Below are positions 15,357-60,172 of a stretch of DNA of 64,000 bases, in pieces. The number at the start of each line of letters is the position of its first letter. Position 1 is the stretch's first letter. The translations under genes and the position numbers were made by a program. Below the pieces are notes generated by a model. It did no database searches. It was given only the letters and a program-made list of their open reading frames with translations, and was not told where the DNA came from. The stretch lies in IMG/VR virus record IMGVR_UViG_3300043409_000928, positions 221,305 to 285,304 of that record, one strand, 5' to 3'.

Positions 15357-15689
15357 TTAAAGTGTATTGAGTGCTGGTTGCATGATTGCTGTCAGTTCAC
15401 GCTCGCGAGCATGAGCCGCTGTCTTGCCACGCACAACTTCCAACAAGTAAGGCGTAAAGCCTTCACGACCGTGTGTACGAAGTGCTTCGCACAGATTCCA
15501 GTTCTTGCTTTCTGTATTGGCACGGCTCAAGTGACGATTAAAACGTCCACGCACAGAGCTTAATGCAGAGCCATCAACCACTGTGATTCCGATGTAGCTT
15601 TCGCCTGTAACTTCGCAGAACAGCTCGTATATCGCATGGTTGCGATCTGTACGGCGCTTGCGTTGTGTTGGAGTGTTTTTGCAGTTCAT
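15357..15689 (-). CDS. GIY-YIG domain protein
   Basis: HAIYELFCEVTGESYIGIT...RFNRH...ARERE. Confidence 0.7.
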   Translation of the reverse strand: MNCKNTPTQRKRRTDRNHAIYELFCEVTGESYIGITVVDGSALSSVRGRFNRHLSRANTESKNWNLCEALRTHGREGFTPYLLEVVRGKTAAHARERELTAIMQPALNTL

Positions 15690-15695
15690 GTTATT

Positions 15696-15724
15696 ATTAT
15701 AGCACTCTGGACCACTTTGGTCAA
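15696..15724 (-). promoter_or_regulatory. sigma70 promoter abutting ATG (leaderless)
   Basis: TTGACC-17-TATAAT-6nt-ATG, no SD. Confidence 0.8.
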
Positions 15725-15911
15725 CCGTTTTCTGGCGTTTTAAGCCGGATTTCTGAGCCTATTTTTGTTGTTTTTTAGCAACAAACTGGGATATGCACTG
15801 GATTAAGCTGGATTAGTATTTTTGTGGGGTTTTTGCAACAAAAAGTAGTGGATTTTGTGGTGAAAGGTGACCCAATAATTGAAGCATTGAATAAATATGT
15901 TTGTGCAAATG

Positions 15912-15931
15912 AAACACCCTTAGGGGTGTTT
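15912..15931. terminator. Terminator hairpin
   Basis: AAACACCC-TTAG-GGGTGTTT, 15 bp downstream of lipoprotein stop. Confidence 0.6.
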
Positions 15932-15946
15932 CTTTTTGGCTTTAGT

Positions 15947-16276
15947 TTAACGACCCAGTCCCGAACGGTATGCTTCATTTTCTCTGCGGCGTTGTTCTTC
16001 ATAGTATCGCTGACGAGTACCACGAGCACAGGCATCACGTTCACTTGAGCTGTAAAAGCGGTTGCATTGTTCGTTAACAATGACCACTTGTTCTTGCCTG
16101 ATTACACGAACTGGCGTTGCATCCTGCACTATTACTGTTCTAGGTTGAGCAAGTGCTGAACCAACGATTAGGCCAGTGGCACCACCGATCAACATGCCAG
16201 TACCGTAGCGACTGGCACACCCTGTTGTTAAAAGTGTCAATGCAACGATTGGGATTAAAATAAGCTTTTTCATCAT
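15947..16276 (-). CDS. Glycine-zipper lipoprotein
   Basis: MMKKLILIP...LLTTG-C lipobox, GMLIGGATGLIVGS zipper; SD AAGGAG. Confidence 0.7.
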   Translation of the reverse strand: MMKKLILIPIVALTLLTTGCASRYGTGMLIGGATGLIVGSALAQPRTVIVQDATPVRVIRQEQVVIVNEQCNRFYSSSERDACARGTRQRYYEEQRRRENEAYRSGLGR

Positions 16277-16295
16277 GTGCTCCTTTGCACTATAT

Positions 16296-16694
16296 TTACC
16301 TACGCATTTTACTAATTGCTTCAGCTTCTTCGCTACTAAAAATTGGGACTGCATTACTCTTGTGCATGGTTCCAATTCCCAGTATCTTAGTTCCAGTATA
16401 ACACTGAACGGGCTTTGTTGCAACCGGACCTAGTATTGTATCAGACCTGCTGGGCCTGCGCGGCCCTGTATCCCGTATATGTGGTCGAGTAACAACAGGC
16501 CCATTAAAAGACTTGGTAGTGGTCTTAATTTTACCATCAGAAAATGGTTTAAACTTGGTCCAAGACTCTTTGGTCTGTTCCCATTGTTCTTCAAGTTCGC
16601 GGGCCTTACGAGCATGTTCGGCACTGGCAAACTTGCGCTTGGTTTTCTTTTTGCCTGTAGTACTAAGCCACGGGCCTTCTAGATGCATGGTCAT
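16296..16694 (-). CDS. Conserved hypothetical phage protein
   Basis: MHLEGPWLST...YTGTKILGIGTMHKSNAVPIF. Confidence 0.7.
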   Translation of the reverse strand: MTMHLEGPWLSTTGKKKTKRKFASAEHARKARELEEQWEQTKESWTKFKPFSDGKIKTTTKSFNGPVVTRPHIRDTGPRRPSRSDTILGPVATKPVQCYTGTKILGIGTMHKSNAVPIFSSEEAEAISKMRR

Positions 16695-16699
16695 GCTTT

Positions 16700-16728
16700 A
16701 TTATAGCACCATGCAACAGCTTTGTCAA
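16700..16728 (-). promoter_or_regulatory. sigma70 promoter abutting ATG (leaderless)
   Basis: TTGACA-17-TATAAT-5nt-ATG. Confidence 0.8.
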
Positions 16729-16762
16729 CGGATTAAATGCAGTATGCAATAGTCAAAAGAAA

Positions 16763-16860
16763 ATGCTCACTTTCGTAAAAATCGGGCACGACTCCTATTC
16801 TACGGACCAGCAGCCGGTCCACACTTATGATAACGCAAAGCGTTCCTAAGGTAGTGTGTT
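16763..16860 (-). ncRNA. Candidate structured non-coding RNA
   Basis: Stems AACGC/GCGTT, GGACC/GGTCC, CGTAGAA/TTTTACG, CTTA/TAAG packed in about 100 nt of non-coding DNA. Confidence 0.45.
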
Positions 16861-16864
16861 CTTA

Positions 16865-17065
16865 TTAAGCCTGTTGCCTTGTTGCGTCAGTTGTATTAAT
16901 CCAAGCCATGAAAAGTGATTCCATATCTGCTTTGTCACCAGCCTGCCAGTTTTTTGATGCAACTTCAAATTCTTCAGCAAATTTGCTAACAACCCATTCG
17001 TCAAAATTTTGTTTGCCGTCTTGCAGTTGCCAAATAGTTCCTTCTTGATCTGTCCATGTAGTCAT
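16865..17065 (-). CDS. Hypothetical protein (paralog of 17143-17400)
   Basis: MTTWTDQEG...GKQNFDEWVVSKFA near-identical to neighbour. Confidence 0.75.
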   Translation of the reverse strand: MTTWTDQEGTIWQLQDGKQNFDEWVVSKFAEEFEVASKNWQAGDKADMESLFMAWINTTDATRQQA

Positions 17066-17142
17066 AATATTTAATTCCTTAAATTAAGTAGGGAATTTTC
17101 TACTCCCATTAATTTTATTTATCTTACGGTAGTGTGTTCTTA

Positions 17143-17400
17143 TTAAGCCCGGCCGCCTGCTGCCACTCGTGCCGCTGCCGCTTCTGCTTCGTTGCGAGCA
17201 ATTCTTGTTTGATTTACCGCGTCGGTGGTGTTGGCCCAAGCAGAAAAAAGTGATTCCATATCTGTTTTGTCGCCAGCATTCCATTTGGTTGATGCAACAG
17301 TAAACTCGTCAGCAAATTTGCTAACAACCCATTCGTCAAAATTTTGTTTACCTTCTTGCAGTTCCCAGACTGAACCTTCTGCGTCTGTCCATGTAGTCAT
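17143..17400 (-). CDS. Hypothetical protein (paralog of 16865-17065)
   Basis: MTTWTDAEG...GKQNFDEWVVSKFA. Confidence 0.75.
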   Translation of the reverse strand: MTTWTDAEGSVWELQEGKQNFDEWVVSKFADEFTVASTKWNAGDKTDMESLFSAWANTTDAVNQTRIARNEAEAAAARVAAGGRA

Positions 17401-17456
17401 GTGTTTAATTCCTTATATTAAGTAGGGAATTTTCTATCCCATCAACTTTATTTATG

Positions 17457-17543
17457 TTAGACCGGGCTATAAGGGTTTCTTGGACGGTCTGTGCCGTCAT
17501 CTTCCGGATAAACCGGGTATTGGTTTTCGTTTTCTGGTTCCAT
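17457..17543 (-). CDS. 28-aa acidic peptide
   Basis: Hand translation MEPENENQYPVYPEDDGTDRPRNPYSPV. Confidence 0.45.
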   Translation of the reverse strand: MEPENENQYPVYPEDDGTDRPRNPYSPV

Positions 17544-17545
17544 GA

Positions 17546-17680
17546 TTATTTCACAATAGGCAGTTTTACAGCTACCTGTGCAATAGAGTCATATAGCCAT
17601 GATACATATATGCAATTAGATATTGATAACACGGCCACAAAAAAGGTTATTGCAAATAACCAAAATAGATATCTTGTCAT
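17546..17680 (-). CDS. 44-aa membrane peptide
   Basis: Hand translation MTRYLFWLFAITFFVAVLSISNCIYVSWLY...; SD AGGAG; ATGA-type overlap with upstream gene. Confidence 0.5.
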   Translation of the reverse strand: MTRYLFWLFAITFFVAVLSISNCIYVSWLYDSIAQVAVKLPIVK

Positions 17681-17880
17681 ATTGATTTTTCTCCTGTTAG
17701 ACCCGGACGAGAAAACCAAAGTTTAAACCATTCTTCTGTGCCCGGACGAATGTTATGTTTTTTCATATATTCGCCCTTCTCTGTTCCACCATGCGTTAGT
17801 GGACTGGCACTTTCAGCAGGTACAGTACTGTCAATCCCAGCAAGCTTTTTCAAACGCTCTAGATCAACTATATCTTGCAT
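17677..17880 (-). CDS. Small putative head-associated protein
   Basis: LKKLAGI motif shared with next gene. Confidence 0.6.
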   Translation of the reverse strand: MQDIVDLERLKKLAGIDSTVPAESASPLTHGGTEKGEYMKKHNIRPGTEEWFKLWFSRPGLTGEKSI

Positions 17881-17884
17881 ATTC

Positions 17885-29980: not shown

Positions 29981-32900
29981 TTATACACTACTTAATAAAA
30001 ATTGTACTACACAGTGAGTTGTTTGTCCCACACCAGCACTGGCACCAGTGATAGCTTTAGTCAAACCAATTGTCATTGTGTTAACTGCTGGATCAAATGC
30101 ACTGAATGCACTTGGACTACCACTTGTGCCGCCACCTGCAAGTGTTCTACCTGCAGTAAATGTGCTTGAAACTGCTGTCAACACATAGGAGTTACTTGCT
30201 CGTTGATAAGAGTATACTTGAGTATTCAATGGAGCACATACACTGCCTGTAAATGTAAATGTAACTGTGGCAACAGTAGAAGTTGCAGTAGCAATAACAG
30301 CACTGATGCCGCCATTTAATACGCTGACACTTGACAAGTTACCAGACGCATCGTATTCGACCTGTACGCTAGCACGGAATACACCTGAGCTTGAGCCGGT
30401 GCCGCCGGATCCACCGCTTACTGTACTTGGTGCCCATGAACTACCATTCCAAACAAGTGCTTGACCTGTTGTTGGTGTTGTGGCCGCCACGTCGGCAAAT
30501 TGATTTAAATTACTTTGTCCTAGACGTGTATCAAAACGTGATGACGTATAATATAAGTTTGAGCTACCTTCAGTGACATTGTCTGTGGTAGCATTTAAAC
30601 TAATTGTACCTGTACCGCTGTTGTAGCTGATACCAGTACCAGCGCCAAATGCTCCACGAGCCAGCGTGTCAGTAAAGTATTTGTTAATGCTACCTTGAGT
30701 TAAATTGTCAGTGGTCTTGGTACCTAGTCTTGTATCCCAACGAGCATTTGTATAATATTGATTGGCTGACCCTTCGCTTACGCTGTCAGTGTTCAGAGTT
30801 ACTGCGCCAGTTAAGCCGTTGACACTGGCAACAGCGCCACTGCCGCCACTAACAGTGCTAGGAGTCCAAGCACTACCTGTCCAAGTCAATACTTGTCCGT
30901 TAGTAGGAGCCGCCGTAATTGTGTCAACGTCTGATAGTGCGTTGATACTACTTGCCGCAATACGTACATCAGCACGAGCATCAGCTCGAGTATTTGTAAA
31001 GAACAAGTTACTACCTTCTGTAATGTAACTTGTATTGGCACGATATTTAATTTGACCAGTGACATCATCATAACTGATCAAGCTAGTGATATTACTATCA
31101 CTGATAGAACTTAGTGCTGATCTTGCTCTGGCATCTGTGTAGTATAATCTAGTGCCTTCAGTAACATCACTAGATGTCACTCCACTCAACGCTGTAGTAA
31201 CACTAACATTAGCACTACCATCAAAACTAACCAAACCAGTTACTTTACCAGTTAAGGTAAGTGTTCTAGCAGTTGTCCATTTATTTGCCTTGTTGGCTAA
31301 ATCAACTTCTAAATCATAGCCAGATTGTGTTGTATTTTGTACACCATAAATCTGTACACTACCAGCCTTGCCGTTGACTGTATAACTTGTACCAGTATCG
31401 CCCTTGGCTCCTTGTGGGATTACAAAGTTCAATGTGGCCGCAGAACTTGTGCCGGCATTTGTAATACTTGCGCTACTGCCAGCGGCACCTGTTGTTACAC
31501 TACCCACTGCAATAGTACCCGCATTACCTTGCGTACCTTGATCACCCTGTGGTCCACGTACATCACCGGCATTTAATACAGTAGAGTCAGATAGTGTAAT
31601 GTTTAAATCATTACCACTTACTGCGGCATTGGTAACAGACACGCCAGCATTTCCTGTATTACCTTTGTCACCTTTTGGTCCAACAATGCTACCAGTATCA
31701 ATTGTACTGGCATCGTCTAATGTAAGTATTAAATTACCATCACCGTTGACTACTGCGCTGAAAACGCCGACACCAGTGTCACCTTTTGGAATAGTAAAGT
31801 TTAATAGTGCCGCACTGGCAGTACCAGTATTTGTAATAACTACGTCTGTACCTGCGGCACCAGTTGCCACAGCATTGATAGTAATGGTACCAGCATCGCC
31901 AGCATCGCCTTTGTCACCCTGTGTACCAACTACACTACCAGCATCAACTGTCGAGCTGTCTGTTTTGGTAATAATTAAATTGCCGCTGCCATTGACAGTG
32001 GCTGAACTGACACCAACACCGGCATTACCTGTGTCGCCCTTAGCACCCTGCGGGATACTAAAGTTTAATGTTACTGCACTGGCAGTACCAGAATTTGCCA
32101 CAGTTGCCGCTGAACCGGCCGCCCCTGTTGTTACACTACCCACTGCAATAGTTGCCGCTGTACCTGTGTCACCTTTGGTACCAACTACGCTACCAGCGTT
32201 GATTGTTGTATTATCTTGCTTTGTTAATATTAATTCGCCACTGCCGTTTATTGCGGCAGTTTTAATACCTGATACATTACCAGCATCAACAATGCTGTTG
32301 TCTGTTAATGTTAATTGTAAACGACCTAACAATGTTACTGTGGCGGCGCTGATACTTAGACCTGCTGAGCCTGCGGCACCAGCCGCACCTGTATCACCTG
32401 TATCACCTTTGGCTCCACTATTAGCAACTGGTACAAAATTTGTACCATCAAAACCTAGGATTTGCCCTGCACTAATTGCACTTACGTTTACACCAGAAAG
32501 TGAATTTAGTGTTACTTGACTTGCAACTGCATTGGCAAATGTAGGATTGACTGATGAAGATACATTGGCTGTAAATTGGTCATCAACATATTTCTTGGTT
32601 GCGGCTTGTAAATCAGCAGTAGGAGCACCTGACAATGTCAATGCACCTGTCATTGTGCCACCTGACAAGTTTACCTTGCCAGCCAGAGTACTTGTAAGGT
32701 CTGTTGCAAAACTTGGATTGCTGGCAATTGCCGCGGCCAACTCGTTTAGTGTGTTTAACGCACCAGGAGCTCCATTGATTAAATTATCTACTTGGCCTGT
32801 AACATAAGTTTGTGTGGCATATCCGTTGTTGTTTAGGTATGTGCCTACATCACTTAATGTTACGCCACCGCCTGTGCCACCTACAGAACTGATAACTCCA

Positions 32901-33475
32901 TTGGTAATAGTAATCGTTGAACCGTCAACTTTGACACCACCCAGTACTGAAGTTGATGCAGTTGGTAATGTGTATGCAGAAGGAATAGTAGGCTTGTTTG
33001 TTAAATCATTGTAGTTGCCACTAAAATTACCACTGCCGCCAGTGATACTGACATTTGCTGTGCCATCAAGAACTGTAACAGTTGCGCCACTTACAAAGTT
33101 AATGCTGGTAAAATTACCACGGTTTGCGGTGTTCTCGTAAATTGAAACACTGTCAAGTCCACCTGTAATAGTGGCAATGTTGTCTTGTACTGCAACATTT
33201 GGCCCAACAAAATTCAATACAGTAGCAGTTCCACGGGCTGTACCATTTTCTTTAACAGCAATACTTCCCGACCCGCCACTGTTGCCACTGCCACCAGCTA
33301 GACTGATCATCAGTTTGCCAGTCACATCATCGTATGATGTTTGTAGTCCGATGTTAATATCGGTGCCTACTTCAATTTGTTCGGCTACAATGTCTTGAAC
33401 ATCTTCTTCTGTGAGGCCTCCGCCACCACCTGTTCCGCCTTGTAGTTGTCCTCCTGAAGATGCATTAATTGCCAT
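29981..33475 (-). CDS. Long collagen-like tail fibre
   Basis: GAKGDTG Gly-X-Y blocks alternating with repeated beta modules; EGxxNLYY repeats. Confidence 0.85.
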   Translation of the reverse strand: MAINASSGGQLQGGTGGGGGLTEEDVQDIVAEQIEVGTDINIGLQTSYDDVTGKLMISLAGGSGNSGGSGSIAVKENGTARGTATVLNFVGPNVAVQDNIATITGGLDSVSIYENTANRGNFTSINFVSGATVTVLDGTANVSITGGSGNFSGNYNDLTNKPTIPSAYTLPTASTSVLGGVKVDGSTITITNGVISSVGGTGGGVTLSDVGTYLNNNGYATQTYVTGQVDNLINGAPGALNTLNELAAAIASNPSFATDLTSTLAGKVNLSGGTMTGALTLSGAPTADLQAATKKYVDDQFTANVSSSVNPTFANAVASQVTLNSLSGVNVSAISAGQILGFDGTNFVPVANSGAKGDTGDTGAAGAAGSAGLSISAATVTLLGRLQLTLTDNSIVDAGNVSGIKTAAINGSGELILTKQDNTTINAGSVVGTKGDTGTAATIAVGSVTTGAAGSAATVANSGTASAVTLNFSIPQGAKGDTGNAGVGVSSATVNGSGNLIITKTDSSTVDAGSVVGTQGDKGDAGDAGTITINAVATGAAGTDVVITNTGTASAALLNFTIPKGDTGVGVFSAVVNGDGNLILTLDDASTIDTGSIVGPKGDKGNTGNAGVSVTNAAVSGNDLNITLSDSTVLNAGDVRGPQGDQGTQGNAGTIAVGSVTTGAAGSSASITNAGTSSAATLNFVIPQGAKGDTGTSYTVNGKAGSVQIYGVQNTTQSGYDLEVDLANKANKWTTARTLTLTGKVTGLVSFDGSANVSVTTALSGVTSSDVTEGTRLYYTDARARSALSSISDSNITSLISYDDVTGQIKYRANTSYITEGSNLFFTNTRADARADVRIAASSINALSDVDTITAAPTNGQVLTWTGSAWTPSTVSGGSGAVASVNGLTGAVTLNTDSVSEGSANQYYTNARWDTRLGTKTTDNLTQGSINKYFTDTLARGAFGAGTGISYNSGTGTISLNATTDNVTEGSSNLYYTSSRFDTRLGQSNLNQFADVAATTPTTGQALVWNGSSWAPSTVSGGSGGTGSSSGVFRASVQVEYDASGNLSSVSVLNGGISAVIATATSTVATVTFTFTGSVCAPLNTQVYSYQRASNSYVLTAVSSTFTAGRTLAGGGTSGSPSAFSAFDPAVNTMTIGLTKAITGASAGVGQTTHCVVQFLLSSV

Positions 33476-36934: not shown

Positions 36935-37429
36935 TTACCCTTTGATTTTCCTTAATTTCTTTTGTTGACGTGTTCGTGCAAGTTGCAATCCCAACGCAGA
37001 ACTTTGACTTGTAAATAATACTCCGTTTAAATGGTCTAGCTCATGTATGTAACACCTTGCCAACAAACCTTCAAACTTCTTCTCTATCACTTGACCGTCA
37101 AGTGTAGCATATCTTGCTTGCACCCATAGTGGCCTCTTGATATTTAACCAGAGAGCTGGGTACGATAAACACCCTTCTAAGGCAATATGTTGATCTTCGC
37201 TTGTTTCAACTATTTCAGGATTGATACACACATAGTTTGGGCCCTCTTGTGGTCCCATTACAAACATGCGTACAGACATCCCAACTTGCGGTGCCGCTAA
37301 CCCAATGCCTCCATTGAGCCACATAATCATAAACATCTCTTTGCTTAGGTGTTCTAGGTCAGTGGCAGAGTCAATTGGTGGTATTGTAATTGATAGAATG
37401 GGATGAGTTTCGTTTACAAGTTCAAGCAT
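36935..37429 (-). CDS. def: Peptide deformylase
   Basis: GIGLAAPQVG, EGCLS, HELDHLNG. Confidence 0.95.
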   Translation of the reverse strand: MLELVNETHPILSITIPPIDSATDLEHLSKEMFMIMWLNGGIGLAAPQVGMSVRMFVMGPQEGPNYVCINPEIVETSEDQHIALEGCLSYPALWLNIKRPLWVQARYATLDGQVIEKKFEGLLARCYIHELDHLNGVLFTSQSSALGLQLARTRQQKKLRKIKG

Positions 37430-37438
37430 GTTATTATT

Positions 37439-38233
37439 TTACAGTTTTTCATTGCAAAGGTCAACTACTCGTTTCTCCGCATCAGCCTGGGTCAATGCAG
37501 GGATTTCTACGGCAACTACAATGTATGCATTTCCTCTACGGGTTGATCCTCGTATGTTGAAACCTCTGTTACGTAACCTTATCTGACCACCATGTTGGGT
37601 ACCAGGTGGAATGGCAACTTCTAACAATGTCCCGTCAATGTCAGTTATTTTAATTGACTTGCCTAGCATGGCCTCCCATATTGATATTTTTTTACCAGCA
37701 TACAACTCACCATTGCGCTGATGCCAAATTGGATGCTCTTGTATGTTTACGGTAACATATATGTCTCCGGGCGGTCGGTTTGGGGTCATTGATGTACCTT
37801 CACCTGCGTATCTGATTTTGATATCTTTGGTTGTGCCAGGTGGGAATTTTACAATAAGTTTTTTGTCAATTCCCTCGGGCAGTGAAAATTCAATGGTCTT
37901 GACAAAGCCAGCATGTGCTTCTTCTAGCGAGCACGGAACGCTGAGATTTACATCTGGGTTTCGTATTGCGGCAGGCTCAAAGTGAAAATCAAAATTACCG
38001 GCTCTCCTGCCCATACTAAAGATATCACTTAAATCGGGATGATGTCCAAATCCTTTAGGTTGATTTATTTCGGTAACAATAGTGTCGTATGCTGTTTGTA
38101 TTTCTTGGAATTTTTTAGTGTCACCGCCTTTGTCGGGGTGATGGATTGATGCTAACTTGCGATAAGCTTTTTTTATTTCTTCTTCACTGGCACCTGGATT
38201 TACTCCAAGTATCTTATAATGTTGTATGCCCAT
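37439..38233 (-). CDS. DnaJ/CbpA-type co-chaperone (no Zn finger)
   Basis: J-domain [21 protein letters not shown] and DnaJ C-terminal domain. Confidence 0.88.
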
Positions 38234-38248
38234 GTGCATACTTACCCA

Positions 38249-39049: not shown

Positions 39050-39271
39050 CTATCCTTTGTGCCTAAATGTAATGCGACCTTTAGTCACATCATATGGGCT
39101 CATTTCTACTTCTACATTATCCCCTGGGATAATGGTAATTCTATTTACTCTTAGCTTCCCTGCTAAGTGTCCTAATATTTCCTGTCCCGTTTCCAACTTA
39201 ATAAGGAACTGTGCATTAGGTAATGCTTCGGTCACTTGACCTTTTATCTTAAAACTATCTTCTTTGGCCAC
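39050..39271 (-). CDS. infA: Translation initiation factor IF-1
   Basis: MAKED..GQVTEALPNAQF..LAGKLR..GDNVEVEMSPYDVTKGRITFR. Confidence 0.95.
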   Translation of the reverse strand: MAKEDSFKIKGQVTEALPNAQFLIKLETGQEILGHLAGKLRVNRITIIPGDNVEVEMSPYDVTKGRITFRHKG

Positions 39272-39273
39272 TA

Positions 39274-39762
39274 TTAATACTTAGTTAAATTCTTCATTCT
39301 TGTATAATATTCCCTGCTTTCGGGCGGCAATGCATAAAGCTGTGGGTCTTGTATGATTCTAGCAGAAAGTTCACCAATTGTCAAGTCTGCCCGTTTACCA
39401 TCCATACCAACAAACTTCCATTGTTGTGAGCCTGTTGCATGTTCAACATCCTCAACAATAGTCAGTATTTTTTCACAAACTCCTGGTAACCTTTTTAGTT
39501 CAATGTATACATGAAATTTACCATCTTTATCGCTGGCATCACTTACTTCAACATCGTCAATGCCTGCACCAGACCATTCTAAATAGGCACCTAAATCTTT
39601 GGCTGAAGTGTCTGTGCTTGCTTTGAAACAGACTACTATTGTATCTGCTTCTGCGCCAAGCTTTGGCTTATAGCGGTCAATCTCAATCAGCGGATTAATT
39701 GTATCCTGTAAGTCGCCTGCCCGAAGGCTTTCTTTAAGCTGGTACTTGTGGTGCTTGATCAT
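39274..39762 (-). CDS. Hypothetical phage protein
   Basis: Start placed at MIKHHKYQL; DRYKPKLG motif. Confidence 0.6.
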   Translation of the reverse strand: MIKHHKYQLKESLRAGDLQDTINPLIEIDRYKPKLGAEADTIVVCFKASTDTSAKDLGAYLEWSGAGIDDVEVSDASDKDGKFHVYIELKRLPGVCEKILTIVEDVEHATGSQQWKFVGMDGKRADLTIGELSARIIQDPQLYALPPESREYYTRMKNLTKY

Positions 39763-40297
39763 CAGTTGGATTCTGTGTAGTATTAGCGTCTTCGCTATTG
39801 GTAGAGAGGCCCTGTTCACCATCTAGTTCTTCGCCATATGCTTCATCAACGCTGTCATAGTCAACATCGTCTGTGTCTTTGATTTCTTCACTAACATCAA
39901 GCAGTTGTTTTGGAATACGCAATGTAACCAACCACACAGACTTTTTAACTGTGCGTGGTACTCGCTCTCCTTTGGAGTTGGTTACAATATCTTCTGGGTT
40001 CTCTACTTTGGCAAAGGTATCTAATATATCCTTGCCAAATTTAACTTTACAGCCATTTTTTACCAAACGCATTGCGGCGTCTGGATTGGGCATCATCTTT
40101 GCAGGATACATCAGTGTTAATTCTACCCAATGGCGCTCTACAAATGGCCCGTCTACAATTTCACCCCTAATCCAGTTTTCATAGGCGTACACATCCATGC
40201 GATCAAGGATACGATCAATTTCTATCAATGTGTCAATAACATTGGGACTAGTGTGTGCTCTATCTAGATTTTTATAAATTAAGTCTTGTGTTGGCAT
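39734..40297 (-). CDS. Hypothetical phage protein
   Basis: 187 aa, acidic tail; TAAATA 7 nt upstream of ATG. Confidence 0.65.
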   Translation of the reverse strand: MPTQDLIYKNLDRAHTSPNVIDTLIEIDRILDRMDVYAYENWIRGEIVDGPFVERHWVELTLMYPAKMMPNPDAAMRLVKNGCKVKFGKDILDTFAKVENPEDIVTNSKGERVPRTVKKSVWLVTLRIPKQLLDVSEEIKDTDDVDYDSVDEAYGEELDGEQGLSTNSEDANTTQNPTDDQAPQVPA

Positions 40298-40469
40298 AGT
40301 CAGATATTTAGCCTTTTATAGCCATCCGCCTGCCCAAGTTGGACTGGTTAGTTAAATACTTTTGGTTCAGCGATGAATCAACCCAAGAGAACAGTTGGGT
40401 TGTATAACATGCAAATCTAAACAATTTAATGAAATCAGCCCAACAATACACTTATTGTCAAGGAGCAAG

Positions 40470-43190: not shown

Positions 43191-43424
43191 TTAATATCCT
43201 TTCAGCTTGTCTATTATAACAGTTTCTTTGTGTTCTTGCAACCAGGCGTCTTCTCCATAGAACTCCGAACACTTGTTTAATTGTCTCTGAGTTTCCCAAA
43301 GTATCTCATATAGTTTTTGTTTTTGACCCCATTGGTAATAACCATCCATGCGCGGGTCAGTACAGTTATATCCAAGTTTCTGAATATCCCAGATTATGTC
43401 AGTGAGGCCTACTTCTGAAGACAT
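43191..43424 (-). CDS. Hypothetical protein
   Basis: Coupled ORF. Confidence 0.55.
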   Translation of the reverse strand: MSSEVGLTDIIWDIQKLGYNCTDPRMDGYYQWGQKQKLYEILWETQRQLNKCSEFYGEDAWLQEHKETVIIDKLKGY

Positions 43425-43584
43425 TTTTAATTGCGTTAAAAAGATTAAGGAACCTGGCCTTGTAAGGATCGTTTAGAATTTGATCCACCATGCTAGGGTG
43501 ATGAGGACAGCGGCCTTGCCGCCAATTGCATTGCGGCGAATATATGTCACCGCAGACTGTACAACGAGTAGTTTTAGTTTCCAT
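43399..43584 (-). CDS. Small Cys/His-rich protein (leaderless)
   Basis: CTVC..C..CPHH; promoter 6 nt upstream of ATG. Confidence 0.6.
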   Translation of the reverse strand: METKTTRCTVCGDIYSPQCNWRQGRCPHHPSMVDQILNDPYKARFLNLFNAIKNVFRSRPH

Positions 43585-43590
43585 ACTCTA

Positions 43591-43619
43591 AGTGTAACAC
43601 CTTACGATTAAAAAGTCAA
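43591..43619 (-). promoter_or_regulatory. sigma70 promoter abutting ATG
   Basis: TTGACT-17-TACACT-6nt-ATG. Confidence 0.65.
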
Positions 43620-47922: not shown

Positions 47923-48568
47923 ATCTCCTTGATGCAAGTACTATCTTGCAAATATGCTCCAATCGCTCTATGTGTTCATAGGCTCTCCATGGACTTGTGT
48001 CAATGGCAACTACTCCATGTCCCTTTATGCCCACAATATCAAAAGCAATATTGCCAGCCGTATCCAATTGCAACTGCCGATGACATTGATCCGCAAGCTC
48101 TTGACTAATAGGAGGCACATCGCCTACATTGGGTGCTACCCGAGTATATCTATTTAATTCTGGAAAGTCTGCACTCACTGTGCTTAGATCAATGCCGGCG
48201 TGCATGGCCGCAATACAGTAAGTGGGGTGAACATGTACAACCACACGAACCTCTCCGGTGTGTTGTCCCATTTCTTTTTGCAATCCAAAATGCAATGGCA
48301 GTTCTCCACTGGGCTTGAGGTTGGCACTGATATCAGTATATGTCAACTCAGTGCTGGCATGATACAGCCTAGGAGGTTGATCATAATAACCTTTCTCAAT
48401 GCCAATCTTCTTAAACTGATCTGGCTGTAGAGTTTGTTTACGAACACCACTTGGAGTGATATAGAAGTGATCACGGTCGTGATGTCGTATGCTAACATTG
48501 CCATCACGACTGGTAATCCAATTACGCTTATAAGCGTCTTCTAATACTTCACAAATGGTTTCTAACAT
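47921..48568 (-). CDS. Class II aldolase/adducin family protein
   Basis: RDGNVS, ITPSG, PSGELPLH, HVHP, GHGVVA. Confidence 0.88.
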   Translation of the reverse strand: MLETICEVLEDAYKRNWITSRDGNVSIRHHDRDHFYITPSGVRKQTLQPDQFKKIGIEKGYYDQPPRLYHASTELTYTDISANLKPSGELPLHFGLQKEMGQHTGEVRVVVHVHPTYCIAAMHAGIDLSTVSADFPELNRYTRVAPNVGDVPPISQELADQCHRQLQLDTAGNIAFDIVGIKGHGVVAIDTSPWRAYEHIERLEHICKIVLASRR

Positions 48569-49077
48569 TATGCAAACAAGTCCTCATTCCATTCACGGTG
48601 TCCTTCACGGAACGCCATGTTACTTTGTGTTTCACGAACTTCTACACGATAGCACCAAAGTCGTTGTGCTTCACCGTGCCCTAGGTAATCTGGAATATAC
48701 ACACCGTTGACATACTTGTAAAGCTGATCTGCTAATCCTTCACAACCCAGTTTGGGCAGGATTGTCAGTTTGGCCAACTTGCGCTGTTCCATCTCTTTGT
48801 AAAAGGCCAGTTCAGGATCGTCCTCTGCTACCAGTAGGGTGTGATCAAATTGGCTTTCCAATACACCTTTGAGTTCTTTGAGGCCACCATAATCGGCCGC
48901 CCAGTTGCGAGCATCCAGATAGTCGGTACCAAAGTAAAACTTCATACTAAAACTGTATCCATGAATTAAATTACAGTGACTATCGGCCCTCCACTGTCTG
49001 TACGCACATGGAAATGCGTCATGATACTCTTTGGTGCTGGTGTACTTGTATTGTACGGGTTGTAATAAATTTGCCAT
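48568..49077 (-). CDS. queD: QueD/6-pyruvoyltetrahydropterin synthase family protein
   Basis: CNLIHGYS, FDHTLLV, GCEGLA, VEVRET; SD AAGGAG supports start at 49077. Confidence 0.8.
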   Translation of the reverse strand: MANLLQPVQYKYTSTKEYHDAFPCAYRQWRADSHCNLIHGYSFSMKFYFGTDYLDARNWAADYGGLKELKGVLESQFDHTLLVAEDDPELAFYKEMEQRKLAKLTILPKLGCEGLADQLYKYVNGVYIPDYLGHGEAQRLWCYRVEVRETQSNMAFREGHREWNEDLFA

Positions 49078-49150
49078 TGTTATCTCCTTTAGATTTAGCA
49101 ATGACATGCAGAATATTTAAAGAGGGATGAATGCCGAAAAGTCCTCTAAC
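49078..49150 (-). promoter_or_regulatory. Pseudoknot-like 5' leader (candidate riboswitch) of queD-like gene
   Basis: P1 AGAGG/CCTCT; loop GGCAT pairs with downstream ATGTC near SD. Confidence 0.35.
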
Positions 49151-51265: not shown

Positions 51266-51408
51266 TCTTCAACTCCGGTTAATGGTGTGTGGGGCCTGTT
51301 AATACAGTACTCGCACGTTGGATCATCACACTTGTCTTCCGTCCATTCATTGGTTTTTTCATTATAATAAGCATCATATTTTTCAGAGTATACAATATCT
51401 TTGTTCAT
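51262..51408 (-). CDS. 48-aa Cys-containing protein
   Basis: Hand translation YSEKYDAYY..CDDPTCEYCINRP; coupled both sides. Confidence 0.55.
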   Translation of the reverse strand: MNKDIVYSEKYDAYYNEKTNEWTEDKCDDPTCEYCINRPHTPLTGVEE

Positions 51409-51938
51409 TATTCTACTTGGTTTACAATTACACCAGCCTGCTTTAGGAAATCAGTTCCTGTTGTATTTCTATAGTTATCACGATAAAATACCTGTTTGAT
51501 GCCGCTTTGGAATACCAATTTGGCACACTCAATACACGGAGCATGAGTAATAAAAATTACAGCACCTTCTGAACTTTCTGGACTACGGGCCACCTTGGCA
51601 ATGGCATTGGCTTCTGCGTGAAGTACTTCAGGTTTGGTTTTAAGACAATAACGCCTTGTTATTTCAAAACTTTCATTGTCATTGGCAACAACAGCAATTT
51701 CCGTGAAGGGCCAGCGGTTATAAATCTCATTGGGGTCAAGCCATCCACCTGTATCAACACTCATATAATCTTTGTCTTCGCAATTGTTATCCCAGCCACT
51801 GGGCATACCATTGTAGCCAATACTGATGATTCTATCATCTTTTACAATAAGGGCACCAACTTGAAGTCGTCGGGCTGTACTTAATTTGGCATAGGTTTCT
51901 GCAACCTGCATGTGTGCCTTAATATACTTTGGTTTCAT
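51408..51938 (-). CDS. dCMP deaminase family protein
   Basis: IISIGYNG, HAEANAI, HAPCIECAK. Confidence 0.9.
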   Translation of the reverse strand: MKPKYIKAHMQVAETYAKLSTARRLQVGALIVKDDRIISIGYNGMPSGWDNNCEDKDYMSVDTGGWLDPNEIYNRWPFTEIAVVANDNESFEITRRYCLKTKPEVLHAEANAIAKVARSPESSEGAVIFITHAPCIECAKLVFQSGIKQVFYRDNYRNTTGTDFLKQAGVIVNQVE

Positions 51939-51944
51939 GATATA

Positions 51945-51973
51945 AGTATAACACACTGATTAGCAGGTGTCAA
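51945..51973 (-). promoter_or_regulatory. sigma70 promoter abutting ATG (leaderless)
   Basis: TTGACA-17-TATACT-6nt-ATG. Confidence 0.8.
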
Positions 51974-57441: not shown

Positions 57442-57524
57442 GTCTGTCCTATTTAGTACGTATTATTGCATTAATTGCTTAGAAAGTCAACTGGGATGTC
57501 AGCCAGAAAAAAGCCCCGGTGGCA

Positions 57525-57725
57525 TCAGTTGTAGTTGTTGTAGTCCGGATAGTCAAAGAAGTGCTCAACTATATTTGAAATATTTCCATAAACCAGTGCT
57601 TCCAAGTGTTCTTGATCTTCTGCACACAGGCTCACATCAGACTCTATGCGCTGATGCAACTCTGAGAGCCAGGAGTTTATCAAGTCCATATGTACTGCAT
57701 TCTTTTCCAGTTTCGTCTTGCTCAT
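57525..57725 (-). CDS. Hypothetical protein (leaderless)
   Basis: Start MSKTKLEK 6 nt after TATAAT. Confidence 0.55.
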   Translation of the reverse strand: MSKTKLEKNAVHMDLINSWLSELHQRIESDVSLCAEDQEHLEALVYGNISNIVEHFFDYPDYNNYN

Positions 57726-57731
57726 TGTGTA

Positions 57732-57795
57732 ATTATATAGTAAAATAGCTGAGCTGTCAAATCCCATTGATAAGTAACAATAACAGTAGTAAAAT
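57732..57795. promoter_or_regulatory. Back-to-back divergent sigma70 promoters, both abutting ATGs
   Basis: Minus TTGACA-17-TATAAT (57732-57760); plus TTGATA-17-TAAAAT (57767-57795) then 5 nt to ATG 57801. Confidence 0.7.
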
Positions 57796-57800
57796 CCCAT

Positions 57801-58358
57801 ATGATACAAGAAGGCCAATATCCAGCATTATTGCTAAACGCAGACTGGCAACCAGTACAGATGCATCCTCTCAGCACGGTTCCGTGGCAAGACTCAATGA
57901 AAGCTGTTGTAATGGATCGTGTGGTAGTGGTTGAAGAATACAACATACGTATCCATAGTGGCCATCAGGAATGGAAATTGCCAAGTGTAATTGCGTTAAA
58001 AGAATATGTAAAACGCGAACAACATGCTACATTTAGTAGATACAATGTATTTCTGCGTGACAATTATACTTGCCAATATTGTGGAGGTGAATTTGAAACA
58101 CGACAGTTGACCTTTGACCATGTGATTCCACGGGCACATGGTGGTAAGAGTAGCTGGACCAATGTGGTATCTGCATGTGGACCATGCAATCATCGCAAGG
58201 GTTCACTGTTGCCTGCCAGTGCAAATATGTTTCCAATAGTTGCTCCAAAGGAACCTAACAGTTGGGAATTATATATTCGAGCAAAGAAAATCCCTCATAA
58301 CAATCTGCATGAAACTTGGAGAGATTATCTATACTGGGATACTGAGCTAGACGCTTAA
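57801..58358 (+). CDS. HNH endonuclease (McrA-like)
   Basis: LLLNAD..P, RDNYTCQYC, TFDHVIPR, NVVSACGPCNHRKG. Confidence 0.9.
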   Translation: MIQEGQYPALLLNADWQPVQMHPLSTVPWQDSMKAVVMDRVVVVEEYNIRIHSGHQEWKLPSVIALKEYVKREQHATFSRYNVFLRDNYTCQYCGGEFETRQLTFDHVIPRAHGGKSSWTNVVSACGPCNHRKGSLLPASANMFPIVAPKEPNSWELYIRAKKIPHNNLHETWRDYLYWDTELDA

Positions 58359-59027
58359 TTACCAATCACTTGCAATGGTAATTTTTGGTCGATGAACATC
58401 CTGCACAGGCCATGTCTGTGCATGTGATCTAAGTGCAGATTTTTTAATATCAAACGATATCATAATTCTGTCCGCTGTCCCTTGATTTCGAGTACCATGA
58501 AATACGTTAGCATCATCAAACCCAAATATTTCACCGGTTATCCACTCGTGTATTTCGTTTTCAATATTAAATTCACAGCCTTTGACACCTACCAGCACCA
58601 AATGCAACCTTAGGTAATTATTGTCTAATCCATAATGATGATTTAATTTAGAACCAGGTGTTGCTATGTTAAAAGTTACACCACCAATTATATCTAAATG
58701 TTGCGTGACCCACTTTGCAATTGTTGGCATTTTATCAAGCCTTGCTGGCCAGAATCTAATTTTTTCATCGGCACCCCAATTCAAAGCCTTTGCTTCATGT
58801 CGGTCTATTAGACAGTCTCGCAGTATCAGTGGTAGGCATTTGAGTTTACCGGTATATAACGGCGCATTAAACGAGTCAGTGATATAATTAGCTTTTGTTC
58901 CGTTCAGTGGGTACTGTGACAATTCGGCCTGAATACTTACAAGAAACTCATCGCGTATACTTGTAAAATTATCGTTAAGATAATCTAATATTTCACAATT
59001 GTTAAAATAGATATAGTGGCTTTCCAT
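58359..59027 (-). CDS. Aspartyl/asparaginyl beta-hydroxylase family 2OG-Fe(II) oxygenase
   Basis: PGSKLNHHYG..LRLHLVL..FDDANVFHG..DRIM. Confidence 0.8.
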   Translation of the reverse strand: MESHYIYFNNCEILDYLNDNFTSIRDEFLVSIQAELSQYPLNGTKANYITDSFNAPLYTGKLKCLPLILRDCLIDRHEAKALNWGADEKIRFWPARLDKMPTIAKWVTQHLDIIGGVTFNIATPGSKLNHHYGLDNNYLRLHLVLVGVKGCEFNIENEIHEWITGEIFGFDDANVFHGTRNQGTADRIMISFDIKKSALRSHAQTWPVQDVHRPKITIASDW

Positions 59028-59040
59028 ATTTTATATTTAG

Positions 59041-59898
59041 TTAAGCATTGATAAACTCTATTGTTAAATCAACGTCGTGATCAATATTGGCACGCCACAT
59101 TAACCGCTCTTCACCTTCTTTTAGGTTTGGGGCGGTTCTTCTATGTACAAAAGGCCAGTTGTCATACAGTACAATGTCGTTTGGTTGCCAACGCATTTCA
59201 TATACACAATCCTTAACCTCTGACATTGCTTCCATTAATTCTTCTAAAATACCTGTGCCTCTGCTGTTGCCCAACGAGTCTTTGGTATCAAGGATCCAAC
59301 TATTTTTAATGCCATGATAGTTACAGCGGGGACTCCATTTGCCTGTGATAGGATGCTGTTTCATTGCACTAGTTTCAACAACATCTCGACCCGGGTGGTG
59401 CCAGTTTTGTTGGAGGATAGTTCTTGATTCCCAACGCTTACGCAGGATAGGATGCACATGATAATAGGCTTCTTCCATATCTAACCAATAGGTAAATCCT
59501 GCTTCTGGATTTGGGACTGTTTTCATGTAGATGCAACGGTGAGGAAAATTGATACCAGCAACTCGATTAGCAATATCTGCATGCCATGGCATTTTATAAT
59601 CAACCAAACGCTTACTCAGTTTGTTGCTCATCCATGTAATGTATCGCATTTGGCCAGATTCGGGATCTGGGACTTCTCGCCAACGCTCAGTGCTTTTAAT
59701 GTATTCTTCTCGGTCCCACGGATTGCCCCATAATGCAAGAAATTTCCAATAGGTCAATTGATCCCAATCCGGAGCATGGAACACCAGCATCTTTCGCTGA
59801 TATAATATTTTTCTAAGTTCGCGTACATCCTGCTGAAGCAAGTCGGAGATGTCGGTGAATTCAGTACCCCAGTGTGTATAAATGTCTTTATATTGCAT
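59041..59898 (-). CDS. TauD/TfdA family dioxygenase
   Basis: WHAD, WQPNDIVLYDNWPFVHRR. Confidence 0.85.
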   Translation of the reverse strand: MQYKDIYTHWGTEFTDISDLLQQDVRELRKILYQRKMLVFHAPDWDQLTYWKFLALWGNPWDREEYIKSTERWREVPDPESGQMRYITWMSNKLSKRLVDYKMPWHADIANRVAGINFPHRCIYMKTVPNPEAGFTYWLDMEEAYYHVHPILRKRWESRTILQQNWHHPGRDVVETSAMKQHPITGKWSPRCNYHGIKNSWILDTKDSLGNSRGTGILEELMEAMSEVKDCVYEMRWQPNDIVLYDNWPFVHRRTAPNLKEGEERLMWRANIDHDVDLTIEFINA

Positions 59899-59905
59899 CT
59901 GGTAT

Positions 59906-60172
59906 TTAACTGGATAACTTATCCATCATTAGCTTTTCTGCTAACTCTTTGGTATGTTTCCGTTGTGCTTCTACCAGCATGGGTATTAGCATTTTAATTG
60001 TATCAATCATTAACTTTTCACCTGGCGCTTTGAGCTCACAGTATTTTGCACTTCCCCCAATATAAGCATATTCTGAATTCCTGAGTAACTCTTTTAAAGT
60101 ACCCATTAAAATTATTGCAACATTATTTTCTTCTTCTTCTATCATATTAGATTCCATCATCGGATCAACCAT
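59906..60172 (-). CDS. Hypothetical protein
   Basis: 88-aa ORF. Confidence 0.55.
   Translation of the reverse strand: MVDPMMESNMIEEEENNVAIILMGTLKELLRNSEYAYIGGSAKYCELKAPGEKLMIDTIKMLIPMLVEAQRKHTKELAEKLMMDKLSS

What the first reader, a model, noticed from the sequence alone, without database searches (positions are those of the whole stretch)
15689..59908. Systematic leaderless transcripts from both promoter classes
Seen: near-consensus sigma70 promoters end 5-6 nt before an ATG with no SD at 15689, 16694, 43584, 51938, 57725 and 57801. TAAATA/TAAGTA motifs sit 4-7 nt before ATGs at 38233, 40297, 59027 and 59898. Inference: a substantial leaderless regulon, unusual for proteobacterial phages, perhaps translated when SD-led initiation is blocked (stress, anti-SD cleavage). 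The phage's own IF-1 may be relevant.
Basis: partly seen in the sequence, partly recalled or inferred. Interest (0 to 1): 0.62.

Follow-up and report, generated by a model that had tools for sequence, protein, structure and literature searches.

The report
Leaderless genes in a freshwater jumbo phage
In this uncultured 285-kb T4-related lake phage, about fifty genes have a promoter set so close to the ATG that the mRNA should begin at the start codon, a layout kept in its relatives but absent from phage T4 and from its closest cultured cousin PA5oct.

Summary
All ten sites exist as described. Two more lie in the window: 37429 (peptide deformylase) and 49107.

- **Early class, whole genome:** strong sigma70-type promoters end 5-6 nt before an ATG that opens a long ORF 13 times, against 1.2 expected.
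- **Late class, whole genome:** TAA[AG]TA ends 4-5 nt before such an ATG 32 times, against 3.9 expected. The phage encodes a gp55-family late sigma. In T4 the late box ends at -6, so a 5-nt gap puts the A of ATG at +1.
- **True starts:** conserved N-termini and domain alignments support these ATGs. None has an SD, and all are ATG.
- **Conservation:** the spacing is kept in related lake-phage contigs while the spacer sequence varies. T4 and PA5oct show no such peak.

No transcription start was mapped, so leaderlessness is inferred. Only metatranscriptome contigs were available, and they are weak evidence.

The capsid, scaffold and other operon-internal late genes use strong SDs.

IF-1 is conserved across the clade and absent from PA5oct, but a functional link is untested.

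Verdict: a new variant of a known kind.

The parts
15689..15724 (-). Early promoter TTGACC(15724-15719)-17-TATAAT(15701-15696), 6 nt, then ATG 15689. It drives the GIY-YIG homing endonuclease gene 15357-15689.
   Evidence: Pfam GIY-YIG aligns to residues 18-99, and the next in-frame start (codon 36) would cut the domain. The promoter and its 6-nt gap are conserved in all relatives, including homologues at 43% identity.
16694..16728 (-). Early promoter TTGACA-17-TATAAT, 5 nt, then ATG 16694. It drives gene 16296-16694 (phrog_27048, function unknown).
   Evidence: The PHROG alignment runs 1-132 against 1-127/127. The N-terminus MTMHL is conserved in 80 homologues. Only L018, L022 and L030 share the leaderless layout; most others have a 20-35-nt leader with an SD.
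36935..37464 (-). Peptide deformylase gene with promoter TTGACC(37464-37459)-17-TAAAAT(37441-37436), 6 nt, then ATG 37429. The -10 box contains the DnaJ stop codon.
   Evidence: Pfam Pep_deformylase aligns residues 2-144 to model positions 2-151/156. The layout is conserved with gap 6-7 and varying spacer sequence in L006, L007, L011, L012 and L015.
37439..38244 (-). DnaJ-like gene with GTAAGTA (38244-38239), 5 nt, then ATG 38233. An in-frame ATG at 38239 overlaps the motif.
   Evidence: L006 keeps TAAGTA at gap 5. L007 and L011 instead have TTGACA-17-TA[AT]ACT at gap 7.
39050..39271 (-). Phage IF-1 (infA-like, 73 aa). It starts at GTG 39271 with no SD, 2 nt after the upstream gene's stop. It is probably translated by coupling and is not itself a leaderless gene.
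   Evidence: PF01176 scores 77 bits. Sequence. It is conserved in 13 of 13 related contigs, mostly with a GTG start. The TAAGTA upstream of it is not conserved.
39734..40310 (-). Virion structural protein gene with CTAAATA (40310-40305), 7 nt, then ATG 40297.
   Evidence: phrog_12928, E 4e-36. CTAAATAtcnnnct-ATG is conserved in 13 relatives at 70-77% protein identity.
43399..43619 (-). 61-aa Cys-rich protein gene with TTGACT-17-TACACT, 6 nt, then ATG 43584.
   Evidence: Orthologues in L003, L005, L007 and L011 keep TTGAC[AT]-17/18-TAnAnT at gap 6 with different spacer sequences.
48568..49119 (-). 179-aa gene with TTAAATA (49119-49114), 6 nt, then ATG 49107.
   Evidence: Conservation was not examined.
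51408..51973 (-). dCMP deaminase gene with TTGACA-17-TATACT, 6 nt, then ATG 51938.
   Evidence: Pfam and PHROG matches. The N-terminus MKxK..A(H/Y)M is conserved in homologues, and the second Met is replaced by I, L or N in some of them. This rejects the downstream ATG that is preceded by AAGG. Eight non-redundant relatives keep gap 6.
57525..57760 (-). 66-aa gene with a perfect TTGACA-17-TATAAT, 6 nt, then ATG 57725. Its promoter stands back to back with the 57801 promoter in a 75-nt gap.
   Evidence: The protein and the gap-6 promoter are conserved in L101, L105, L107, L116 and, by inspection, L106.
57767..58358 (+). HNH endonuclease gene with TTGATA-17-TAAAAT, 5 nt, then ATG 57801. The site is ambiguous because TAAGTA also lies 23 nt upstream.
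   Evidence: Relatives have either TATAAATA at gap 4 (L105, L107) or GATAAGTA about 24 nt upstream without an SD. Two metatranscriptome contigs from two runs end at 57796 and 57797.
58359..59039 (-). Asp/Arg-hydroxylase-like gene with CTAAATA (59039-59034), 6 nt, then ATG 59027.
   Evidence: The motif is not conserved in L112 and L115, where stop and start overlap instead. Support is weaker here.
59041..59908 (-). 285-aa gene with TTAAATA (59908-59903), 4 nt, then ATG 59898. The TAA of the motif is the stop codon of the upstream gene.
   Evidence: Ten relatives at 66-83% identity keep [ATG]TAAATA at gap 4-7. Homologues at about 33% identity have an AAGG SD instead.

Best explanation
**What the phage is.** The window is the last 64 kb of an uncultured freshwater jumbo myovirus of the T4 superfamily. 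It belongs to the Rak2/PA5oct-like group.

**Two promoter classes.**
- Early genes use host sigma70-type promoters (TTGACA-17-TATAAT).
- Late genes use a T4-type promoter, a lone TAA[AG]TA box read by the phage's gp55-family sigma factor.

**The leaderless layout.**
- About 15 early and 33-38 late transcription units have the promoter placed so that the expected first transcribed base is the A of the first gene's ATG. For early units the -10 box ends 5-6 nt upstream. For late units the box ends 4-5 nt upstream.
- Those first cistrons are therefore made as leaderless mRNAs.
- By analogy with known leaderless mRNAs, they would be initiated by 70S ribosomes on the 5'-terminal AUG with no Shine-Dalgarno pairing.
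- Downstream cistrons in the same operons use ordinary strong SDs.

**Shown here.** The motif geometry and its statistics, the true start codons, the absence of SDs, conservation in relatives, and the presence of the late sigma.

**Inferred.** The transcription start positions and the 70S mechanism.

**Likely benefit (inference).**
- 300 of 351 rough gene calls lie on one strand, and most leaderless genes follow an upstream gene with no detected terminator.
- An SD-less gene would then be translated well only from transcripts that start at its own promoter. This ties translation to promoter firing.
- From my own knowledge, not checked here: T4 reaches the same end for lysozyme and I-TevI by hiding the RBS in read-through transcripts.
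For: **Geometry and statistics.**
- The spacing peaks are strong in both classes.
- The T4 late box spans -13 to -6 (PMC1524935), so a 5-nt gap puts the A of ATG at +1.

**Late sigma and late genes.**
- A gp55-family late sigma is encoded (phrog_12791, E 2e-80).
- The portal gene starts TAAGTA-acgct-ATG and heads the portal-to-capsid operon.

**The motif acts on DNA as a promoter.**
- No other conserved element lies upstream of the late box.
- 39% of the motif's occurrences lie in the 9% of the genome that is intergenic.
- It is the rarest same-composition hexamer in coding DNA on both the sense and the antisense strand.
- About 37 further copies sit 9-74 nt upstream of other gene starts, most of them SD-led.
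- 11 candidates lie in divergent intergenic gaps. The tightest seen are about 45-75 nt and are filled by the two promoters.
- The TAA of the motif is the upstream gene's stop codon in only 6 of 38 cases.

**The ATGs are the true starts.**
- Domain and PHROG alignments reach residues 1-2.
- The N-termini MTMHL, MKPKYIKAHM, MPTQD and MQTK are conserved in homologues.
- Candidates at the first start of their ORF are ATG, while 11% of SD-led starts are GTG or TTG.

**Conservation.**
- The spacing is kept with variable spacer sequence for the deformylase, deaminase, 61-aa, 66-aa, GIY-YIG, structural and 285-aa genes.
- 60 non-redundant related loci (403 kb) show the same peaks.

**5' structure and RNA.**
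- The first 25-45 nt are less structured than in SD-led genes (p 0.02 and 0.005).
- Two RNA-library contigs end 4-5 nt before ATG 57801.
Against: - No transcription start site was mapped. The RNA data are assembled contigs from relatives and cannot define 5' ends.
- One contig spans the 59898 junction. Read-through RNA, or DNA in the library, therefore exists there.
- ATG at gap 6 also follows strong promoters that lead to tRNAs or tiny ORFs. Part of the early-class peak in all ATGs reflects the ATA-like initial sequence.
- Late gaps of 4, 6 and 7 nt need flexible start-site choice, or leave leaders of 1-2 nt.
- No gp45 homologue was found by BLAST. gp33 was not searched here; it is reported missing from the relative CBB (PMC5259590). 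The late-promoter geometry of this group could therefore differ from that of T4.
- 57801 and 59027 are not conserved as leaderless sites.
- The host is unknown.
Confidence: 0.75

Rival explanations
1. The motifs are promoters, but these genes are mainly translated from longer read-through transcripts. The SD-less internal AUG would be reached by termination-reinitiation or by 70S scanning from the upstream cistron. The fixed promoter-to-ATG distance would then be a by-product of compact packing.
For: - 26 of 43 candidates follow a same-strand gene with no detected terminator.
- In 6 of 38 cases the TAA of the motif is the upstream gene's stop codon.
- A contig spans the 59898 junction.
- IF-1 and many distant homologues are clearly coupled in this way.
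Against: - Packing does not predict a 1-2-nt-sharp peak at exactly the +1 distance in two unrelated promoter classes.
- 11 candidates sit in divergent gaps and 4 lie behind terminators, so they have no upstream cistron.
- The spacing is conserved while the spacer sequence drifts.
Confidence: 0.1
2. TAA[AG]TA acts on the mRNA as a short-range translation signal, 4-5 nt before AUG. It might bind S1 or pair weakly with the 3' end of 16S rRNA, since UAAG matches the start of UAAGGAGG. On this view it is not a promoter.
For: - The fixed distance to AUG resembles SD spacing.
- TAAG is the first part of the extended SD TAAGGAG that this phage uses elsewhere.
Against: - The same box lies 9-74 nt upstream of about 37 other gene starts, most of them SD-led.
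- It is avoided on the antisense strand of genes as strongly as on the sense strand.
- It matches the known late box of T4 and CBB/GAP32 (PMC1524935, PMC5259590), and a gp55-family sigma is present.
- TAAATA could pair with only 3 nt of the rRNA.
- Units in divergent gaps or behind terminators need a promoter, and no other motif is present.
Confidence: 0.05
3. One reading: a leaderless regulon that is selectively translated when the phage or stress disables SD-led initiation (for example by anti-SD cleavage), with help from the phage IF-1.
For: - IF-1 is conserved across the clade and absent from PA5oct, which also lacks the leaderless signature.
- IF1 and a surplus of initiator tRNA stimulate leaderless translation in vitro (PMC9031893).
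- The phage carries two initiator-like tRNAs and a peptide deformylase.
Against: - The capsid, scaffold and other late operon-internal genes depend on strong SDs. About half of all genes are SD-led.
- Leaderless genes occur in both the early and the late class, so no single time window fits.
- PA5oct also has an initiator-like tRNA.
- No S21 homologue was found. No anti-SD nuclease was looked for.
Confidence: 0.07
4. The starts are mis-assigned. The true starts would be downstream ATG, GTG or TTG codons with SDs, and the promoters would give short SD-containing leaders.
For: - Genome 42973 has ATG...GGAG...ATG six codons downstream.
- 51938 has AAGG before codon 10.
Against: - In the deaminase the second Met is not conserved, while the first 9 residues are.
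- MTMHL, the Pep_deformylase alignment from position 2, and the GIY-YIG domain all require the first ATG.
- Most candidates have no nearby in-frame start with an SD.
Confidence: 0.03

Closest known systems
Thermus phage phiYS40 (and P23-45): leaderless middle and late genes
   Same: A large virulent phage in which many later-class transcripts start at the start codon. Its promoters for these genes lack a -35 element. Basis: Sevostyanova et al. 2007 as cited in PMC4842269 and PMC12340547, plus my own recollection of that paper.
   Different: - The Thermus host phylum uses leaderless mRNAs routinely (PMC12340547). The promoters there are extended -10 boxes read by the host sigma.
- Here the late box is T4-type and is read by a gp55-family sigma.
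- Here early sigma70 promoters also take part.
- Here SD-led and leaderless genes are mixed within the same operons.
- The primary paper was not available to me.
T4-type late promoters (TATAAATA, gp55), including ATAAATA of the Rak2-like phages CBB and GAP32
   Same: - A lone A/T-rich box with no -35 element.
- A gp55-family sigma is present.
- The box precedes the portal gene and virion protein genes.
- The motif is known in the same phage group (PMC5259590, PMC1524935).
   Different: - In T4 the box-to-ATG distance peaks near 25-29 nt, with none at 4-6.
- In PA5oct, ATAAATA shows most ATGs at 20-31 nt.
- Here about half of the boxes abut the ATG.
- G is tolerated at the fourth position (TAAGTA).
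Classical leaderless phage mRNAs (lambda cI from PRM) and leaderless-rich bacteria (Actinobacteria, Deinococcus-Thermus)
   Same: A -10 box about 6-7 nt before a 5'-terminal AUG, no SD, and AUG required (PMC9031893, PMC12340547, PMC4633059).
   Different: Lambda has a single regulatory gene of this kind. Here the layout covers about 14% of the genes, under two sigma factors, in a phage whose cultured relatives infect Proteobacteria.
T4 transcript-specific translation of lysozyme (e), soc and I-TevI
   Same: It has the same logical outcome as my functional proposal. Translation happens only from transcripts that start at the gene's own late promoter, and it includes a homing endonuclease. This comparison rests on my own knowledge and was not checked here.
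   Different: T4 does this with an RBS-sequestering hairpin in read-through RNA. Here the means would be the absence of any RBS.

Membership tests
Leaderless mRNA genes | The transcript's 5' end lies at, or within a few nt of, the start codon. | not testable with these tools
   This is inferred from promoter geometry: sigma70 -10 boxes end 5-6 nt upstream and the late box ends 4-5 nt upstream, while the T4 box ends at -6 (PMC1524935). Only contigs from RNA libraries were available, and two of them end 4-5 nt before ATG 57801.
Leaderless mRNA genes | No Shine-Dalgarno sequence, and an AUG start codon. | tested here: met
   None of the candidates has an SD core within 18 nt. Those at the first start of their ORF are ATG, while 11% of SD-led starts are GTG or TTG.
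Leaderless mRNA genes | The promoter-adjacent ATG is the true N-terminus. | tested here: met
   Supported by Pfam and PHROG alignments from residues 1-2 and by conserved N-termini in up to 80 homologues. This was not tested for every candidate.
T4-type (gp55-dependent) late promoters | The phage encodes a gp55-family sigma factor. | tested here: met
   phrog_12791 'sigma factor for late transcription' scores E 2e-80 and phrog_234 scores E 9e-24. There is also a weak direct match to T4 gp55.
T4-type (gp55-dependent) late promoters | A TATAAATA-like box with no -35 element, placed before late genes. | tested here: met
   The core is TAA[AG]TA and nothing upstream of it is conserved. It precedes the portal gene and virion protein genes, and also radical-SAM, DnaJ and hydroxylase-like genes.
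T4-type (gp55-dependent) late promoters | The gp33 co-activator and the gp45 sliding clamp are present. | tested here: inconclusive
   T4 gp45 found nothing by BLAST in the record. gp33 was not searched. Both are reported missing from the relative CBB (PMC5259590). The record is 86% complete.
Sigma70 -35/-10 promoters | TTGACA and TATAAT hexamers with a 16-18-bp spacer. | tested here: met
   The seven window sites match 9-12 of 12 positions, all with 17-bp spacers. Promoter activity was not tested.
   Late operon-internal genes, including the major capsid gene, carry strong SDs. 185 of 351 rough gene starts are SD-led.

The most novel reading that the evidence does not exclude
A clade of freshwater T4-superfamily jumbo phages has moved both host-sigma and phage-sigma promoters onto the start codons of about 50 first cistrons. 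It also carries a conserved phage IF-1, initiator-like tRNAs and a peptide deformylase. Together these could form a phage-encoded initiation module that shifts host ribosomes towards 70S leaderless initiation. Translation of those genes would then be gated by promoter firing. This would be the first such system outside the leaderless-rich phyla.
Probability: 0.15. Interest if true: 0.8.

Novelty: new variant of a known kind. Interest (0 to 1): 0.6.

Why it matters
- **New for this promoter type.** If the starts map where the geometry predicts, T4-type late promoters can be fused directly to start codons on a large scale. I found no report of this for T4-like or Rak2-like phages in the papers searched. 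T4 and PA5oct lack it by the same test.
- **A natural comparison set.** The same genes are leaderless in one lineage and SD-led in others: phrog_27048, the 285-aa gene and the dCMP deaminase. This allows a direct study of what makes leaderless initiation work in a Gram-negative-type setting.
- **A testable role for phage IF-1.** IF-1 genes recur in huge phages, and their function is unclear.
- **Annotation.** Gene callers that insist on an SD will misplace these starts.

Tried and rejected
- **Near-DNA search against cultured phages:** no match.
- **RNA evidence:** lake metatranscriptome runs hold relatives only as assembled contigs. No 5' ends can be read, and one contig crosses the 59898 start.
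- **T4 gp45 by BLAST:** nothing found.
- **Ribosomal protein S21:** none found.
- **A hidden -10-only promoter class among SD-less genes:** none found.
- **Initiator-like tRNAs as a marker of the leaderless clade:** rejected, because PA5oct has one too.
- **IF-1 as itself leaderless:** rejected. It has a GTG start, sits next to the upstream stop, and its upstream motif is not conserved.
- **The motif as merely the upstream gene's stop codon:** rejected, true in only 6 of 38 cases.
- **Downstream SD-led starts:** rejected for the deaminase and others.
- **Host identification:** relatives cannot be drawn for a virus record, and I ran no further search on it. The host remains unknown.
- **Literature:** the phiYS40 primary paper is not held.

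Full report
**Context.**
- The window is bases 221,305-285,304 of a 285,304-bp IMG/VR virus record that is 86% complete.
- It has no near relative among cultured phages at the DNA level.
- It encodes a T4-type major capsid protein (Pfam Gp23, 323 bits) and a T4-type portal (335 bits).
- The capsid protein is 62-64% identical to those of the Rak2-like jumbo phages PA5oct, GAP32, CBB and Phosso.
- The record carries 29 tRNAs and a two-piece tmRNA of the Betaproteobacteria type.
- Related sequence occurs in freshwater and lake metatranscriptomes.
- In a rough gene model, 300 of 351 genes lie on the minus strand.

**Check of the observation.**
- All ten sites are as described. Six have TTGAC-like and TATAAT-like hexamers with 17-bp spacers that end 5-6 nt before an ATG. 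Four have TAAATA or TAAGTA ending 4-7 nt before an ATG.
- None has an SD core within 18 nt.
- Two sites were missed: 37429 (peptide deformylase) and 49107.

**Statistics on the whole record.**
- Sigma70-type class: 116 promoter-like sites match at least 10 of 12 positions. ATGs that open at least 60 codons fall into two groups, a sharp peak at gap 5-6 and a broad peak at 20-38 nt with an AAGGA or GGAG SD. The sharp peak holds 13 cases against 1.2 expected (p 5e-10).
- Late class: there are 257 TAA[AG]TA sites, with 32 such ATGs at gap 4-5 against 3.9 expected (p 9e-19). With gaps 3-7 and ORFs of at least 40 codons there are 38 genes.
- The two hexamers rank first and second among 75 same-composition permutations for this placement.
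- TAAATA is the rarest of its 15 permutations in the genome and TAAGTA is the second rarest of 60. 39% of their copies lie in the 9% of the genome that is intergenic.

**What the late motif is.**
- The phage encodes a gp55-family late sigma factor (phrog_12791, E 2e-80).
- The T4 late box TATAAATA spans -13 to -6 (PMC1524935). Related jumbo phages CBB and GAP32 use ATAAATA before structural genes (PMC5259590).
- A 5-nt gap therefore puts the A of ATG at +1.
- Nothing else is conserved upstream of the box.
- In coding DNA the box is avoided on the antisense strand as strongly as on the sense strand. This fits a DNA signal rather than an mRNA signal.
- Its TAA is the upstream gene's stop codon in only 6 of 38 cases.
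- Eleven candidates lie in divergent intergenic gaps. Examples are genome 65249/65296, genome 164858/164910 and window 57725/57801. The 75-nt gap at 57725/57801 is filled by two back-to-back promoters.
- About 37 further boxes lie 9-74 nt upstream of other gene starts, most of them SD-led. Roughly half of the late promoters are therefore leadered.

**Are the ATGs the true starts?**
- Deformylase aligns to Pfam from position 2. phrog_27048 aligns 1-132 to 1-127 of 127. GIY-YIG needs the first ATG.
- Eighty homologues of the 16694 protein all begin MTMHL.
- dCMP deaminase homologues keep MKxK..A(H/Y)M, and some lack the second Met. This rejects the downstream ATG that is preceded by AAGG.
- The first 25-45 nt of the candidates fold less stably than those of SD-led genes (p 0.02 and 0.005). 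Low 5' structure is a known requirement for leaderless mRNAs (PMC8459731).

**Conservation.**
- In related lake-phage contigs the promoter-to-ATG spacing is kept while the spacer sequence changes. This holds for:
  - the deformylase gene;
  - the 61-aa gene;
  - the deaminase gene;
  - the GIY-YIG cassette, even in homologues at 43% identity;
  - the 66-aa gene;
  - the structural gene at 40297;
  - the 285-aa gene at 59898.
- Across 60 non-redundant related loci (403 kb) the same two peaks appear.
- The layout is also interchangeable. Most distant homologues of phrog_27048 have leaders with SDs, and distant homologues of the 285-aa gene have an AAGG SD.

**Less secure sites.**
- 57801: relatives have a late box at gap 4 or about 24 nt upstream, and the window also has TAAGTA at 23 nt.
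- 59027: the motif is not conserved.
- ATG at gap 6 also follows promoters in the tRNA region that open only tiny ORFs. The usual initial transcribed sequence is ..ACAC ATA...

**Controls.** The same histograms show no peak at gap 4-6 in T4, where the late box-to-ATG distance peaks near 25-29 nt. They show none in PA5oct either, for either promoter class. The PA5oct and phiKZ transcriptome papers report no leaderless phage mRNAs (PMC7318152, PMC8244752).

**RNA evidence.** Only contigs from RNA libraries of relatives could be laid. Two contigs from two runs end at 57796 and 57797. Another crosses the 59898 start. This is too weak to decide the question.

**What the genes are.**
- The early-class leaderless genes encode nucleotide and DNA-metabolism enzymes: an HD hydrolase, two exonucleases, a dNMP kinase, an SbcD-like nuclease and the dCMP deaminase. 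The class also includes the deformylase, two homing endonucleases and several small proteins.
- The late-class genes include the portal, virion proteins, radical-SAM proteins, the DnaJ-like protein and many proteins of unknown function.
- The portal gene is leaderless and heads an operon whose inner genes, including the capsid gene, have strong SDs.

**Interpretation.**
- The best reading is that promoter-proximal cistrons are made as leaderless mRNAs and are initiated on a 5'-terminal AUG.
- I propose, as an inference, that the lack of any RBS ties translation to firing of the gene's own promoter in a genome prone to read-through. 26 of 43 candidates follow a same-strand gene with no detected terminator.

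**IF-1.**
- It lies at window 39050-39271 and is conserved in 13 of 13 related contigs.
- It starts mostly with GTG next to the upstream stop, which suggests translational coupling.
- It is absent from PA5oct.
- IF1 and a surplus of initiator tRNA stimulate leaderless translation in vitro (PMC9031893).
- The phage has two initiator-like tRNAs, but so does PA5oct.
- A functional link is possible but untested.

**Verdict.** The feature is real, conserved and clade-specific. It is a new variant of known leaderless expression, and it awaits 5'-end mapping.

Noticed in passing
outside the window: genome 31062-31136 and 32465-32540 (minus strand): Two of the four tRNA-CAT genes have the bacterial initiator acceptor stem (CGCGGGG...CCCCGCAACCA, with the C1/A72 mismatch). 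They lack the three consecutive G:C pairs in the anticodon stem. PA5oct has one similar tRNA.
   Followed up: partly
outside the window: genome 43002-43400 (minus strand), locus L098:332-722: A two-piece (permuted) tmRNA with tag ANDSQFALAA. Its best Rfam match is Betaproteobacteria tmRNA at 132 bits. This is the only hint about the host lineage.
   Followed up: partly
window 15357-15724: The GIY-YIG endonuclease gene and its promoter are 87-99% identical in contigs whose neighbouring phrog_27048 gene is only about 50-60% identical. This looks like a recently spreading mobile cassette that carries its own leaderless promoter.
   Followed up: partly
window 39050-39283: IF-1 begins with GTG in the window and in most relatives, has no SD, and starts 2-5 nt after the upstream gene's stop. 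A non-AUG start on an initiation factor gene recalls the autoregulated AUU start of infC; that comparison is from my own knowledge.
   Followed up: partly
window about 40330-40350, and L003-L015 about 40 nt upstream of position 6001: A conserved block (a/c)TTGG(G/C)TAGG(G/T)T lies upstream of the late box of the structural gene in relatives. The window has the variant cttgggcaggcg. Its function is unknown.
   Followed up: no
window 37436-37441: The -10 box (TAAAAT) of the peptide deformylase promoter contains the stop codon of the DnaJ-like gene. The whole promoter lies inside the end of that gene.
   Followed up: no
outside the window: genome 21260, 22435, 33817, 37109, 171045: Strong consensus promoters have ATG at gap 6 but open only 2-21 codons. 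Several lie within or beside the tRNA cluster. These could be chance ATA-to-ATG variants or leaderless mini-ORFs.
   Followed up: partly
window 2783-8479 and 29981-33475: Two very large minus-strand ORFs of 1,898 and 1,164 aa. The second has a tail-fibre-like region shared with Methylophilales phage Melnitz and with T4-like cyanophages.
   Followed up: no
L097 (contig of 524,565 bp) and L197 (contig of 345,154 bp): Homologues of window genes occur on much larger IMG/VR contigs, up to 524 kb. The gene pool is therefore shared with even bigger lake phages.
   Followed up: no
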